From Saccostrea echinata (lineage: Eukaryota): a DNA stretch of 64,000 nucleotides. The notes beneath the pieces are model-generated. The model saw nothing but the letters and a program-made list of their open reading frames with translations. It made no database searches and was not told the DNA's origin. Where the stretch lies: positions 3,100,001 to 3,164,000 of the forward strand of contig NW_026889824.1 of NCBI RefSeq assembly GCF_033153115.1, written 5' to 3'. Both the position numbers and the translations under genes were made by a program. This document shows, in pieces, positions 1-13,234 of the stretch. How positions within the stretch are numbered: position 1 is the stretch's first letter; each line of letters begins with the position of its first letter.

Positions 1-3000
1 GCTCTGTCAGCCTGTCTCACAACCTGGGCCATCGCCACTTTTGTACCTCTTATATATGTGCCATTTATTTTGCTTTTTATAGGGTAAGTTACTGCCATCA
101 TAGATAAGCATAGGCTCAAAAGTTAATCCAGATTTTAAGATTTGATACCAAAAATCTTTACTTCCTCTGTTAGGAATTTAAAGTGGCACTACATGAACAT
201 ATCTTGTAATCTATTTAAGGAATATCTGTCTAGTTTTTGGTTTTATGATGTGATCAATCAGTTTGCTCGCATGATGATCAGCATAAACGCCGAAGGCGTA
301 TTTGCTTAACATTATAATGCAAGTAAACTGATTGAGCATTATCATAAAATCAAAAAAAAAAAAAAAAACAGGCAGTTTTTCCTTATATTTACATTTTCAA
401 CAGATCCTTCATTCAATTAAAAAAATATTTTTATTCAATAATTAGAAATCTCTGCAGGCCCTCCCAGTGTCTGTCATGTGCTGAAAAAATTTATGGGAAT
501 ATAAAGCTGTTAGCTTATATGTAGGTTTATCTCTGACAAAGACATTTAAAATATAGATATTAGGGTCTACTATTTGATTCTGAGTTTAAAGAATTGCTTT
601 TGAAACCAAGGAACTCCTTGAATCTCTATGCATAATTTCAAAATCTTTCTACTGCTTTTACTTTCAGGTTTGTTTTATTTCAAGTGTTCATGACACCAGC
701 CACCTCTTCCTTCAAACTGAACCTGAAGGATCACAAGGAGGATGTCAATATCCTTAACAACCAACTCATTGCTGCCATGGCAACTGGATTTTGTTTACTT
801 CCTGTTTTCCTTCAGATTCTCATTGCTCTGTATCAGAGAGGATTTCATGGAGTCTTTCACTTAGGCTTCTTTGTAAGTAATACCAGTAATTCTTTTGAGA
901 TGAACATTATCAATTTTATAAATCTAAAAAGTAGCTTTTGTTACAGTTCAATAAAAGTTTGTGGAATACACATACAGTGATATATATGTTACCAGATCTC
1001 AAGCATGATTTGATTGGCCTTTCAATAACTTTGGAAAAAAACAAAACAAATTACAAATGATTATAATGCAGTATTTAAATGGAAAGACACACACACAAAA
1101 ACACTATGAGAGACATTAGAAGTCTTCTGATTACATCCTTGAAGTTATTTGCATATGTAGACCAATAATATGTCTTTCATTTAATTTCAGTGTGAGTTAC
1201 TGTTCTTGTTGTGTTTGGCTGTGTTTCTGATGACTTTGATGAGTATCAGACACATTGTGGAAGCTGTAGGTACGGAGAGATCATCATTTTTATTGTCTTT
1301 ACTCTTCCTTGGAAAAAGCAACCAAAAGTTCAGATCTGCTCCAAACAGATTTTTGAATTCGCCTTCCAACACTCTGCAATCTTGCTTGCAAGAGTGTAAC
1401 AGAAAAAAAATTGATATCCTCATCCAGTTTTAAATATGAAGTAAATACATGTACTTATTCACATTAGATAATGCTTAATTATCTCTTGTGAGATTGTTTT
1501 GCAAATATCATTGAATTCTTTACAATAATGAATCACATTTAGGCCATGATTATCCATTTCAGAAGTTGATTAGAGTGTGTTTTGTGTCATTTATTGTATG
1601 TATCCCTGTATTCATGATTTAAATATGTACTCATGATTTACATGTACCTGTGATAGCAGCATAAATAATGGTATGCTTATAAACAGTTCTGTATATTATG
1701 AATTAAAACAGGTTTCCAGTACAGTCTGGTGATACAGTTACGCAGTCTCTGTGGGGGTGTGGCAGCCTTCCTGTCTTACCCAGTATTCCTAGAGCTGGGA
1801 GTGACATCACACTTTCTGTCATGGCTGCCATTTGCTGTTGGAGTTTATGCTGTATATGGAACACTGCTTAGTTATAGAAAACTTAAGGTTAGGGAGAAAA
1901 AATGTCAAGTGTCCAGCATAAATATAGAAACATGAGGTTTTCTCAATACATTTAAAACCTCTTCTAAAAGTTATTTTCATCAGTGTCATGGAATTCCAAA
2001 TGACAATACTCTGTGCATGTCTGTGCAAATTAGCCATTTTCATAATATCAGTGTTTAATCCTTGTGTCAATGTTCACTATGACAAAAGTCTTCTAACTTT
2101 ATTTCAATCAAGAATTGATCGTTATTACTTTCTTAAATGCTCACAAGCAATAACTTCTTTGGTTACTTTACAATTATTTCTTTTTCAGTTCATCTCCACA
2201 GTGTTCTTTGTGGTAGCTGTGAATTTGTCTTTGGTGTGGGCAATTAAATTGCCATGGAAATTATCATATCCTTTATACAATTTCTGACAAACAATGTATA
2301 CCATACATAATCAAAATAATGTGTTAGTACACATATAATGAAAAATTCTAAATATTGCATTAAAGACAATAACAGAATATGTAAATCATTGTATAACACT
2401 TAATCCTTTCTAGACTCCTCAAAAATTCAAAAGAAAAAGTTTTTTAAAAAAAAATTGATCTTTTATTTTAATAAGTTATATGTATCCCCTTAACAGTATA
2501 TTACATATACATTTATGTTTGGGATATCGCTGAAGATGATATTCTGTCTGATGATAGCTAACTCTGTCCTGTGTCTGACAGCTGTACATCTGTCCTCTCA
2601 CGGAACTCAGGCAGCCTTCAGTCTCCTAGTGGTATTACAAACCATAGGTAGGTGGTTATTATAGCTTACTGAGTGTAACATTGTATGTTATATATACTGT
2701 AGATTCCTTTTTTTTACGCCAGTACTTTTAAATATCATACATGTAAAGGACCCATAGATGTCAAATCGTGAAAACGTTAATTCGCGAGTGGGACTGTTTA
2801 TGAAAAATTTTAAATGTTTCGGCAATATAAAATAAAAGCCCTTAATTTTATTTCGCAAGTGGTGCTTCTTGGGAAATTACGCAATAGTAAATTCCTTGCA
2901 TATATTTAGGAATCTACAGTACATAGCACACAAAGTATAAGTGTATGTGTCTTAGGTCTACGCTTCTTCATACAAAGAGGAAAACTGTTGTATTGAAGTA

Positions 3001-11500: not shown

Positions 11501-13234
11501 TCGTGTGTGCTCTTTTTGCGTTCTCAAAATCAGAACATCTTGGACACAAGTTTGAGAAAAATGTTCTATCAGTGTAAGTATAAGAAAAATTTTGAATAAA
11601 ATTCTCCACAAAAGTTATATTTGGAATTGGATAGACACATGTTTAAAGATTTTGAATTACTTTCTCAGAAACTACATGTGCTTTATATTCACTGTCTTTA
11701 TACATATATTTATAAAATGTAATAATTAATATGAGTTTAATACAGGGTGTCCCTGATAAAAAGTATACCTGTGCAATATGACTAACAGAGCATGTAAACA
11801 GTGCATGCTGATTTGTTCCTTTTTGCAGATGCATGCTGGTAGTTTTACTTAGTGTCCTTTCATTAGTGGTTGACTTGGTCACCAAGGAACGCAAACAACC
11901 CATCTTGACTCTGCCATCATGGAAGTTATTCCTTGCAGCAAATCTCATCATTTGTATATGCACCAAAGTAGTTGTTTCTAGGGTAAGATTATATGCATTG
12001 TGAGAAGTAAAAATGATTGGATAAATGTATCATAATTCTTGTTAAATACATAGTTTTTTTTTAATTCTTGATGTAATATTTCCATGCTCATTGGAAGCAC
12101 TTGCAAAAGATAATTTGAATTTCAATATTACACATGTCTGTAGGAAAAATGTGAATTAAATTACTGAATGATTTGAAAGTGGAAAGGTGCGCTTAAATGA
12201 ATAAAGTAATTTAATATATCCAAAGTGTGTAGTTTTCAATGTTCTTGTAAAACTGTGTATAAAAGAGTTAATATATCGATCATTTTAATATTATTGGTTC
12301 AGAACTCAGAATATATCCCTCTACATGAGAAGGATGATAAGGAGATTCCTTATTTACCATTGGTTGGCAACATAACAACCATCACTTCCTTCCTGTTTCT
12401 GTGTCTACTGGGGCCCTCCACAGGGTTACTGTATGAAATATGGGTAAGTTTCACAGTTAGGTTAAACCAATCACCAATCATGTTTAAAAATCTTTAATAC
12501 TAGTTTAAGCAAATGTCACTGATCATTTTGTCAAGAATTTTTCTTTTTCTAATGAAATAAAGATTTAGCATTGATGCTAAATGCATTAATTTAATAATTA
12601 GAAATTTATAAGTAGTTATGTCCCTTTATCTGTTCGATAGCTTCTTTAACAATTCAAAGATACACACTCTTATAACAAATTCATGTTATGGGTACAAGTA
12701 TTAATCATTTGTTCCAGTTATTCTATAGTTGAATTTTTAATTCAAGTCAAAAGTTTGTTGATCAAAAGCAACATTTATAGCAATCTCTCATATTTATTTT
12801 CCCTCTTTTTTCAGTGTTGTGGAGCAAGTGTGATCCTAATGTGTTTACAGAGAGACATGAAAATTTTTCACAACCTCAAAGACAGCAATCACACAACACC
12901 AACGAAAATCATTTCAATTGTAGTTTTGATTCTGTCTTCAATATGTCGCAGTGACATCTGGCATTCAAACTCTTGGACATTTGTGAGATCGTTCTTAGAA
13001 ATTCTTCTAATTCTGGGCAGCACCCCCATTTATTACGTGCTGTGGGGCATCTTATGGAAATCTGTTGTGTTGCTACCAGAACCAGTGGTTGTTTTTCTGT
13101 TGCCTCTGAATGCTGCTATGTTGCTTTATGGCAGCAGCTGGACCTGCTGGGTGTTAGCCTTTGTGGGCATTAGCTCTTCTGTGTGGATGATGTCAAACCA
13201 CTTTAAATTAATACCATACTCAGAGAAAAGATAA
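1..13234 (+). CDS. Multi-exon polytopic membrane protein, 5'-truncated by the window edge; NEF1 (NO EXINE FORMATION 1)-like
   Basis: Exons read by hand: 1-83, 668-872, 1191-1269, 1712-1887, 2189-2265, 2505-2647, 3214-3310, 4932-5139, 5592-5706, 6515-6662, 7053-7197, 11437-11573, 11829-11982, 12303-12443, 12815-13234 (TAA). All introns are GT-AG except 2266-2504 (AT-AC). Phases match at every junction; total 2328 nt = 775 aa + stop, made up largely of hydrophobic helices. AATAAA at 13357-13362. The NEF1 resemblance (e.g. VIMFQPD, LPLVGNITT, CLQRD, FLLPLNA) is from memory and less certain than the gene model. Confidence 0.88.
216..387. repeat. Imperfect long palindrome with GCCGAAGGC centre (possible Crypton-type non-autonomous remnant)
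   Basis: Arms taagg...tttatgatg..tcaatcagtttgct / agtaaactgattga..tcataaaa...cctta around GCCGAAGGC at 289-297. Confidence 0.55.
2266..2504 (+). other. U12-type (minor spliceosome) AT-AC intron
   Basis: 5' site ATATCCTTT (2266-2274), branch site CCCCTTAAC (2486-2494), 3' AC at 2503-2504. Splicing gives an in-frame ...KLPWKL-S-YTFMFG...; without it the exon runs into TGA at 2285. Confidence 0.9.
2695..2921. mobile_element. MITE with TACTGTA termini
   Basis: Perfect 14-bp inverted ends TACTGTAGATTCCT (2695-2708) / AGGAATCTACAGTA (2908-2921); intronic. Confidence 0.7.
3598..3809. mobile_element. MITE with TACTGTA termini
   Basis: Inverted ends tactgtacgtgtacataa / ttaagtacacatacagta. Confidence 0.6.
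7574..9600 (+). mobile_element. Helentron-associated non-autonomous element (HINE/DINE-like) carrying ~165-bp satellite-like repeats
   Basis: T-run, then 5' subTIR hairpin ggtcacctgagt-c-actcaggtgacc, a GTC/GTCC microsatellite and about 7-8 units of ~165 bp (aaattgtgaaattcatggcccctgggtcagggg...). 3' subTIR actcaggtgacc at 9564-9575 and terminal palindrome aggccc-tt-gggcct; ends in TTT. Confidence 0.85.
8446..8518. repeat. (TA)n microsatellite
   Basis: Pure TA run inside one satellite unit. Confidence 0.95.
9814..11336 (+). mobile_element. Helentron-associated element (HINE-like) carrying ~146-bp tandem repeats
   Basis: subTIRs tcacctcgacgaag (~9824-9837) / cttcgtcgaggtga (11295-11308), ggcgtc microsatellite, 3' palindrome gtaatc-ttt-gattac. 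Absent from the paralogous sequence near 37190-37230 (empty site). Confidence 0.85.
9889..11250 (+). repeat. Tandem array of 146-147-bp units
   Basis: Unit starts (caggtt...) at 9889, 10035, 10181, 10328, 10474, 10620, 10766 are nearly identical; about two degenerate units follow. Confidence 0.95.

What the first reader, a model, noticed from the sequence alone, without database searches (positions are those of the whole stretch)
1..13234. Apparent animal homolog of plant NO EXINE FORMATION 1 (NEF1)
Seen: a phase-consistent 15-exon model for a protein of at least 775 aa made mostly of membrane helices. Inference from memory of Arabidopsis NEF1, a poorly understood polytopic protein needed for pollen exine/lipid deposition: several collinear blocks look alike. 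These are GISLKMIFCLMIAN, LYNWPLFMVTG..SYTLQRL, GVVTGVIVIMFQPD, LPLVGNITTITSFLFLCL, ILMCLQRD..F, WTFVRSFLEILLI and FLLPLNA. If real, this is an ancient, patchily retained eukaryotic membrane family with no animal function known to me. Its many introns argue against contamination or recent transfer.
Basis: partly seen in the sequence, partly recalled or inferred. Interest (0 to 1): 0.75.

Follow-up and report, generated by a model that had tools for sequence, protein, structure and literature searches.

The report
Oyster membrane gene resembling plant NEF1
This is a real, transcribed oyster gene for a large membrane protein of unknown function that is shared by molluscs, worms and starfish and probably, though not yet provably, is a distant relative of the plant pollen-wall protein NEF1.

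Summary
Window 1-13234 (+) carries 15 phase-consistent exons, 2325 nt = 775 codons plus TAA. Ten of the 15 exon peptides occur letter for letter, in order, in a 967-aa RefSeq protein named only "uncharacterized protein LOC133178545 [Saccostrea echinata]". The other five differ by one residue each. Contigs of four public runs skip all 8 introns of window 1-6000 at the modelled borders, including an AT-AC intron.

The protein is almost entirely membrane helices. It belongs to a conserved family found in molluscs, annelids and starfish. The family has no Pfam domain and no convincing solved-structure relative.

The NEF1 reading is only partly supported. A protein-language-model search with the Ostrea edulis ortholog put two "No exine formation 1" clusters first and a green-alga cluster third, but at lead-level scores of 0.84 and 0.83. 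A divergent family member did not reproduce this. phmmer with the last exon gave no plant name among the 30 of 55 hits I looked up. I could obtain no plant NEF1 sequence, so no profile or fold comparison was run. I put homology at about 0.7. Function is unknown and my lipid-handling guess is inference.

The parts
1..83 (+). Exon 1 of the window part of the gene (open at the window start; P0067 residues 193-219 plus a split codon). Donor GTAAGT at 84.
   Evidence: The joint 83>668 is seen in contigs of 3 runs.
668..872 (+). Exon 2 (P0067 221-288, exact).
   Evidence: The joint 872>1191 is seen in 3 runs.
1191..1269 (+). Exon 3 (P0067 289-314, exact).
   Evidence: The joint 1269>1712 is seen in 4 runs.
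1712..1887 (+). Exon 4 (P0067 316-373, exact).
   Evidence: The joint 1887>2189 is seen in 2 runs.
2189..2265 (+). Exon 5 (one residue differs from P0067). It is followed by the donor ATATCCTT.
2266..2504 (+). AT-AC intron: donor ATATCCTT at 2266, CCTTAAC about 10 nt before the terminal AC at 2503-2504. I recognise these as U12-type consensus motifs from recall.
   Evidence: Sequence. A joint skipping 239 nt is seen in contigs of 3 runs; the tool prints 2264>2504 with 5 letters fitting either side, which allows 2265>2505. Also noted by an earlier first-stage reader, s1-803369.
2505..2647 (+). Exon 6 (P0067 400-446, exact). Holds GISLKMIFCLMIAN.
   Evidence: The joint 2647>3214 is seen in 3 runs.
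3214..3310 (+). Exon 7 (P0067 448-478, exact). Holds LYNWPLFMVTG.
   Evidence: The joint 3310>4932 is seen in 2 runs.
4932..5139 (+). Exon 8 (one residue differs from P0067). Acceptor TAG at 4929-4931.
   Evidence: The joint 5139>5592 is seen in 3 runs.
5592..5706 (+). Exon 9 (one residue differs from P0067).
   Evidence: Contig pieces lie on 5589-5707 (table 8).
6515..6662 (+). Exon 10 (P0067 588-635, exact). Holds GVVTGVIVIMFQPD.
   Evidence: No reads were laid here.
7053..7197 (+). Exon 11 (one residue differs from P0067).
   Evidence: No reads were laid here.
7198..11436 (+). Intron 11, 4.2 kb and full of repeats: 164-168-bp units at 7889-8926, (AT)36 at 8446-8518, and a 146-bp minisatellite in 7 copies at 9888-10910.
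11437..11573 (+). Exon 12 (P0067 685-729, exact).
11829..11982 (+). Exon 13 (P0067 731-781, exact).
12303..12443 (+). Exon 14 (one residue differs from P0067). Holds LPLVGNITTITSFLFLCL.
12815..13234 (+). Exon 15, the last coding exon: 139 codons (P0067 829-967, exact) plus TAA. Holds ILMCLQRD, WTFVRSFLEILLI and FLLPLNA.
   Evidence: Runs X1-X4 hold 65-77% of the sampled words of 12815-13500.

Best explanation
Window 1-13234 holds the last 15 exons (775 of 967 codons) of an expressed, normally spliced oyster gene. Its product is a protein of about 967 aa made almost wholly of membrane helices behind a short disordered acidic N-terminus.

Shown: it is the allelic or duplicate copy of the gene that RefSeq lists as 'uncharacterized protein LOC133178545 [Saccostrea echinata]'. 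It belongs to a conserved family present in bivalves, gastropods, a cephalopod, annelids and starfish. That family has no Pfam domain, no detectable internal repeat and no convincing solved-structure relative.

Inferred, about 0.7: this animal family is a distant branch of the family of plant NO EXINE FORMATION 1.

Inferred, weak, about 0.3-0.35: it works as an endomembrane protein that moves or organises lipidic or other hydrophobic material. This rests on the lipid and sterol-ester defects reported for Arabidopsis nef1, not on any catalytic or transport motif seen here. Animals have no plastids, so a shared function could not be plastid-specific.
For: Gene and splicing:
- Exon model with consistent phases and no stops, 775 codons.
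- 10 of 15 exon peptides are exact in P0067 and 5 of 15 differ by one residue.
- 8 of 8 introns in window 1-6000 are skipped by contigs of runs X1, X2, X3 and X5. Contigs of about 2 kb cross several exons.

Family:
- phmmer with exon 15 gave 55 hits at E<=1e-3, 32 at E<=1e-10 and 8 at E<=1e-30.
- Named hits come from Ostrea, Pinctada, Mactra, Patella, Batillaria, Biomphalaria, Babylonia, Nucella, Lymnaea, Mytilus, Acanthosepion, Owenia, Capitella and Acanthaster, from Saccostrea, Haliotis, scallops and Pomacea, and from Asterias.
- In the 14-sequence alignment A1, mean column identity is 37% and 21 columns are invariant.

Architecture:
- The AlphaFold2 model has pLDDT 74.2 and pTM 0.59, with 35 helices and residues 1-64 disordered.
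- A hydropathy scan of P0067 finds 30 peaks, some overlapping.

No known family:
- Pfam: nothing credible for 10 exon-bearing open frames (best E 0.062), and no family in 6 of 8 full-length members, the other 2 having only sub-threshold hits.
- Foldseek against the PDB gave 0 matches at E<=1e-3. VIA wide gave a best Z of 9.5, where the tool says Z under about 13 is unreliable for helical proteins.

NEF1 link:
- In the ESM Atlas, ranks 1 and 2 are 'No exine formation 1' clusters and rank 3 is a 1064-aa Chlorophyta cluster. These sizes (1064-1134 aa) are close to the animal proteins I aligned (865-1129 aa in A1).

nef1 phenotype:
- Passages read in PMC3220415 and PMC12346373.
Against: NEF1 link:
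- The ESM scores are 0.84 and 0.83. The tool states that a third of shuffled proteins get a first hit of 0.8 or more, and that hits under 0.9 are leads only.
- The divergent member P0044 did not return NEF1; its best hits were bacterial hypothetical proteins at 0.85-0.86.
- phmmer with exon 15 over 1.84 billion representatives listed no hit that I could identify as a plant. I looked up 30 of the 55 hits; 23 carried a source name, and every one with an organism was an animal. The other 25 hits were not looked up.
- Profile and single-sequence searches in the 5.8-billion database found animals only. Their word filter cannot reach kin at about 20% identity, so this is weak negative evidence.
- No alignment, E-value or TM-score between this family and any plant NEF1 was obtained.

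Function:
- Nothing in the sequence identifies a substrate, a catalytic site or a compartment.
- The plastid location of NEF1 quoted in the papers cannot apply to an animal.
Confidence: 0.65

Rival explanations
1. The animal family is a lineage-restricted (spiralian plus echinoderm) polytopic membrane family unrelated to NEF1. The resemblance reflects only size, helix density and hydrophobic composition.
For: The ESM scores are below the tool's 0.9 lead threshold and were not reproduced with P0044. No plant was identified among the phmmer hits. No plant appeared.
Against: The shared-feature counts of 170 and 177 of 256 sit at or above the 170 that the tool gives as typical of same-family hits. 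The P0044 hits shared only 120-141.
Confidence: 0.25
2. It is a diverged member of an already characterised transporter, channel or membrane-enzyme superfamily that these searches missed.
For: Whole-model fold searches of a 967-residue protein can miss single-domain matches, as the tool notes. Domain-by-domain folding was not done. There is a weak sequence hit to PDB 6bhp_A, 'Membrane protein', at E 0.0023 and 19 bits over profile positions 750-858.
Against: No Pfam family reached its cut-off in 8 of 8 full-length members; the only rows were OppC_N at E 0.015 and MSP1a at E 0.34. Foldseek found nothing at E<=1e-3, and its top rows are soluble helical-repeat proteins with TM-scores of 0.1-0.18. 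The best VIA Z was 9.5 with rmsd 5.9 over 194 residues.
Confidence: 0.08
3. The window copy is a non-functional duplicate or an assembly haplotig of the annotated gene, not an independently working gene.
For: The whole locus occurs twice in the assembly, on contigs C75 (the window) and C3, with the same partial downstream copies. The two copies are 99.9% identical over 3.4 kb around the last exons, and 94% over a 1.8-kb aligned piece of an intron-rich stretch. For 4 of the 5 exons that differ from P0067, the P0067 version is exact in the C3 copy.
Against: The window copy has no stop or frameshift in any of its 15 exons and differs from P0067 by only 5 of 775 residues. It looks like an intact allele. 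This rival concerns copy status only, not what the gene is.
Confidence: 0.5

Closest known systems
Plant NO EXINE FORMATION 1 (NEF1, AT5G13390)
   Same: Both are large proteins made mostly of membrane helices with no Pfam domain. The NEF1 Atlas clusters are 1111 and 1134 aa; the animal proteins I aligned are 865-1129 aa. NEF1 clusters are the nearest neighbours of the O. edulis ortholog in protein-language-model feature space.
   Different: No significant sequence or structure alignment was obtained here. NEF1 is described as a plastid integral membrane protein needed for primexine and for lipid accumulation in tapetum plastids (passages in PMC3220415, and PMC12346373). Animals have neither plastids nor exine. 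The animal proteins are about 100-150 residues shorter.
RefSeq 'uncharacterized protein LOC133178545 [Saccostrea echinata]' (P0067) and its orthologs, for example O. edulis LOC125674965 (P0058)
   Same: This is the same gene. 770 of the 775 window codons encode the P0067 residue (10 exons exact, 5 with one change each). Exon-by-exon tblastn identity to P0058 is 76-97%.
   Different: The window copy carries 5 single-residue differences and lies on another contig than the copy that matches P0067 in 4 of those 5 exons. The database records give no function or family.
Known multi-pass transporter and enzyme folds in the PDB
   Same: It is a many-helix integral membrane protein.
   Different: No match was found. 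Foldseek gave 0 at E<=1e-3. VIA wide gave a best Z of 9.5, to the adenylyl cyclase 5 membrane part with rmsd 5.9, within the tool's stated noise for helical models. A profile search of PDB sequences gave one weak hit at E 0.0023.

Membership tests
NEF1 family (plant NO EXINE FORMATION 1) | Significant full-length, collinear sequence or profile similarity to plant NEF1 | not testable with these tools
   No plant NEF1 sequence could be fetched. Searches returned animals only. One search (exon 15 only) listed no hit I could identify as a plant.
NEF1 family (plant NO EXINE FORMATION 1) | Nearest neighbours in an independent similarity space are NEF1 proteins | tested here: inconclusive
   With P0058, ranks 1-2 were 'No exine formation 1' at 0.84 and 0.83 with 170 and 177 of 256 features, and rank 3 was Chlorophyta. 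With P0044 there was no NEF1 among the rows shown; the top hits were bacterial at 0.85-0.86.
NEF1 family (plant NO EXINE FORMATION 1) | Large protein (about 1100 aa) made almost only of membrane helices, with no other domain | tested here: met
   The ortholog is 967 aa. The AlphaFold2 model has 35 helices and the hydropathy scan gives 30 peaks. There is no Pfam domain. The NEF1 Atlas clusters are 1111 and 1134 aa with no common Pfam family.
NEF1 family (plant NO EXINE FORMATION 1) | Shared predicted fold (TM-score against a NEF1 model) | not testable with these tools
   No library of predicted cellular structures is on hand, and the Atlas holds no model of P0058 or P0044.
Conserved invertebrate family of LOC133178545 / LOC125674965 | Strong full-length similarity to the family's members | tested here: met
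   Exon 15 gave E 4e-72 to 1e-10 against 32 representatives. All 15 exons match P0058 and P0067 in order.
Characterised transporter, channel or enzyme families (Pfam, PDB) | Any profile hit above the curated cut-off, or a fold match above background | tested here: not met
   Domain-wise fold search was not done.

The most novel reading that the evidence does not exclude
NEF1 is not a 'novel plant protein'. It is one branch of an ancient eukaryotic family of membrane proteins with roughly 25-30 helices. Spiralians and echinoderms kept it. I saw no vertebrate, arthropod or nematode name among the hits I looked up, but absence there was not tested. If so, the family's core job predates plastids and pollen, and is probably a general endomembrane role in lipid or hydrophobic-precursor handling. 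The plastid assignment of plant NEF1 would then need re-examination, and marine invertebrates would offer a second, independent system in which to find out what NEF1 does.
Probability: 0.6. Interest if true: 0.6.

Novelty: new member of a known kind. Interest (0 to 1): 0.45.

Why it matters
NEF1 has been known since 2004 only through a male-sterile Arabidopsis mutant, and its molecular activity is still unknown (passages read). If the animal family is truly related, the protein's basic function cannot be tied to plastids or exine. It could then be studied in oysters, snails, annelids or starfish, and the conserved residues shared across kingdoms would point to the working parts.

Independently of NEF1, the work defines a conserved, expressed and wholly uncharacterised animal membrane family with no Pfam model and no known fold.

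In the paper library I found no mention of an animal relative of NEF1. All 19 papers with 'no exine formation' and all 8 with AT5G13390 have plant or alga titles. One paper, on bamboo, holds 'NEF1 homolog'. I judged these from search listings only, and supplements were closed.

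Tried and rejected
- **Pfam on exon-bearing open frames and on 8 full-length relatives.** Nothing was usable.
- **Profile search with alignment A1 in the 5.8-billion database.** Only the 8000 candidates sharing most words were scored, and 13 animal proteins were returned. Some members of the query alignment itself were missed. I suspect the acidic low-complexity N-terminus of the first sequence swamped the candidates, so this says little about distant kin.
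- **Region-limited search with Biomphalaria P0019 residues 112-240.** It collected 141 candidates and returned 8 hits, all gastropods.
- **Search with Acanthaster P0100 residues 60-933.** It returned only its own isoform and Asterias.
- **ESM Atlas with P0044.** No NEF1 appeared.
- **PDB sequence profile search.** One 19-bit hit to 6bhp_A, which I treat as chance.
- **Foldseek PDB and VIA wide on the whole model.** No credible match. I did not fold domains separately, so 'no known fold' holds only at whole-model level.
- **hhalign between four blocks of A1 to look for internal repeats.** Non-adjacent blocks scored under 1% probability. The adjacent-block hits are the overlaps I built in.
- **The search for related loci with A1 on genome contigs and metagenome contigs.** Both stopped with 'no stretch conserved enough'.
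- **Name look-ups of 10 further short hits.** These gave no organism names.
- **Pseudogene reading.** Rejected: no stops, spliced contigs, strong conservation.
- **Contamination or recent transfer.** Rejected: 14 spliceosomal introns, orthologs across three phyla.
- **Joined step.** Each exon was translated and compared on its own. Full-length work used database proteins P0058 and P0067 and alignment A1.

Full report
**What is in the sequence.**
The window is AT-rich, 30-39% G+C per 2 kb. The eighth, SYTLQRL, was not found in any single frame; by my exon borders it spans an exon junction.

From the DNA I drew 15 exons: 1-83, 668-872, 1191-1269, 1712-1887, 2189-2265, 2505-2647, 3214-3310, 4932-5139, 5592-5706, 6515-6662, 7053-7197, 11437-11573, 11829-11982, 12303-12443 and 12815-13231, with TAA at 13232-13234.

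A script that treated each exon on its own found the following:
- All phases are consistent and no exon peptide contains a stop.
- Thirteen donors begin with GT, and the printed acceptor flanks of those introns end in AG.
- One intron has the donor ATATCCTT.

Full-length analyses used database proteins.

**Independent support for the model.**
phmmer with exon 15 alone (139 aa) against 1.84 billion representatives gave 55 hits at E<=1e-3, and 8 at E<=1e-30. The profile search returned P0067, which RefSeq names 'uncharacterized protein LOC133178545 [Saccostrea echinata]' (967 aa).
- Ten of the 15 exon peptides are exact substrings of P0067, at contiguous positions between residues 193 and 967.
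- The other five each differ by one residue.
- The O. edulis ortholog P0058 (967 aa) matches all 15 exons in order at 76-97% identity.

**Transcription and splicing.**
Runs X1-X4 hold 65-77% of the sampled words of the last exon plus its 3' flank. Their type is only guessed as RNA.

When X1, X2, X3 and X5 were laid on window 1-6000, their contigs skipped all 8 introns there at my borders. Each is seen in 2 to 4 runs, and contigs of about 2 kb cross several exons. Contigs that lack the introns show that a spliced form exists. They say nothing about level or tissue.

The six introns beyond 6000 rest on the protein match only.

The 2266-2504 intron is AT-AC. Its donor is ATATCCTT, and CCTTAAC lies about 10 nt before the terminal AC; I recognise these as U12-type motifs from recall. 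An earlier first-stage note, s1-803369, flagged the same intron. I confirm that it is spliced.

**Extent and copies.**
The gene starts upstream of the window. Matches to residues 1-223 of P0058 lie at G000:C75:3097508-3100093, and the window begins at 3100001.

The same locus, with the same partial downstream copies, is also on contig C3. The two copies are 99.9% identical over 3.4 kb around the last exons, and 94% over a 1.8-kb aligned piece of an intron-rich stretch. For 4 of the 5 exons that differ from P0067, the C3 copy carries the exact P0067 version. The window is therefore most simply the other haplotype, or a very recent duplicate, of the annotated gene. It is intact.

**The protein and its family.**
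Named relatives come from these groups:
- Bivalves: Ostrea, Saccostrea, Pinctada, Mactra, Mytilus and scallops.
- Gastropods: Patella, Haliotis, Batillaria, Biomphalaria, Babylonia, Nucella, Lymnaea, Pomacea, Aplysia and others.
- A cephalopod: Acanthosepion.
- Annelids: Owenia and Capitella.
- Starfish: Acanthaster and Asterias.

Of the 23 looked-up clusters that carry a source name, the representative is 'uncharacterized', 'hypothetical' or 'unnamed' in 22 (one also has a UniRef label 'NADH dehydrogenase subunit 2'), and one from Mactra has a pleckstrin-type label.

Fourteen full-length members align with 37% mean column identity and 21 invariant columns. The best-conserved stretches are residues about 65-240, 300-360 and 820-945 of P0058.

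AlphaFold2 on this alignment gives pLDDT 74.2 and pTM 0.59. It shows a disordered acidic N-terminus (residues 1-64) followed by 35 helices with only short loops. A hydropathy scan gives 30 peaks. I found no internal repeat.

**Comparison with known families.**
- Pfam gave nothing above cut-off for the exon-bearing frames or for 8 of 8 full-length proteins.
- The PDB sequence profile search gave one 19-bit hit at E 0.0023.
- Foldseek against the PDB gave no match at E<=1e-3. Its top rows are soluble helical repeats with TM-scores of 0.1-0.18.
- VIA wide gave a best Z of 9.5, where the tool warns that helical models reach about 13 by chance.

Domain-wise folding was not done.

**The NEF1 question.**
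For:
- The ESM Atlas feature search with P0058 put two clusters automatically named 'No exine formation 1' (Streptophyta; 1111 and 1134 aa) at ranks 1 and 2. Their scores were 0.84 and 0.83, with 170 and 177 of 256 shared features.
- A 1064-aa Chlorophyta cluster came third.
A chance coincidence among 7.7 million clusters seems unlikely to me.

Against:
- The tool says hits under 0.9 are leads, and that a third of shuffled proteins reach 0.8.
- The divergent member P0044 returned bacterial hypothetical proteins at 0.85-0.86, sharing only 120-141 features.
- Among the 30 of the 55 exon-15 phmmer hits that I looked up, 23 carried a name, and every one with an organism was an animal.
- The three word-indexed searches found animals only. 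Their filter cannot reach relatives at about 20% identity, so this negative is weak.

I could obtain no plant NEF1 sequence or model by any tool, so the decisive profile-profile or fold comparison was not run. My own recollection of NEF1 also suggests collinear similar blocks, but that is recall, comes from no call and was not tested. I put homology at about 0.7.

**How it may work.**
Shown: it is an expressed, conserved protein with roughly 25-30 membrane helices and a cytosolic-looking acidic tail.

Inferred: if it is a NEF1 relative, the only functional clue is the Arabidopsis mutant. That mutant has defective primexine, reduced lipid accumulation in tapetum plastids and fewer sterol esters, and the protein is described as a plastid integral membrane protein or transporter (passages in PMC3220415, and PMC12346373). 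The original 2004 paper was not seen.

My best guess, at about 0.3-0.35, is an endomembrane protein that moves or organises lipidic or hydrophobic material. A shared function cannot be plastid-specific, because animals lack plastids. A membrane-embedded enzyme or a structural scaffold remain open.

**Novelty.**
The gene is already in RefSeq as 'uncharacterized', so the gene itself is not new. The possible link of a spiralian and echinoderm family to NEF1 is what would be new.

In the paper library I found no mention of an animal relative:
- All 19 papers with 'no exine formation' have plant titles.
- All 8 papers with AT5G13390 have plant or alga titles.
- One bamboo paper holds 'NEF1 homolog'.

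These were search listings only. Supplements were closed and might list such hits.

I rate this a new member of a known but barely understood kind, with interest 0.45.

Noticed in passing
window 2266-2504: An AT-AC intron inside the gene, with donor ATATCCTT and CCTTAAC about 10 nt before the terminal AC (U12-type motifs as I recall them). Contigs of 3 runs skip it. Reading through the donor instead gives a stop at 2285-2287.
   Followed up: partly
window 37317-38537 (+): A partial second copy of the gene's 3' end. It has exon 12-, 13- and 14-like pieces and only the last 49 codons of exon 15 (P0067 residues 919-967), at 83-94% identity to P0067 for the better pieces. The same fragment is on contig C3. 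O. edulis also has a shorter neighbour gene, LOC125674968.
   Followed up: partly
window 18719-19055 (+): A diverged, frame-shifted copy of the last exon: 40% identity in one frame, then 92% over the last 24 codons in another frame. It looks like a decayed fragment.
   Followed up: no
window 7889-10910 (intron 11): Repeat-rich intron: units of 164-168 bp in 2.5-3.5 copies at 7889-8926, (AT)36 at 8446-8518, and a 146-bp minisatellite in 7 copies at 96% identity at 9888-10910.
   Followed up: partly
G000:C3:7394698-7435758 (-) versus G000:C75 (the window): The whole locus is present twice in the assembly. The copies are 99.9% identical over 3.4 kb around the last exons and 94% over a 1.8-kb aligned piece of an intron-rich stretch. 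This is probably an unmerged haplotype.
   Followed up: partly
window 2801-3000 and 3601-3800: Very high summed contig depth in all four runs (up to about 1400), with many variant letters and loose ends. These look like pieces of abundant, probably transcribed, interspersed repeats inside introns 6 and 7.
   Followed up: no
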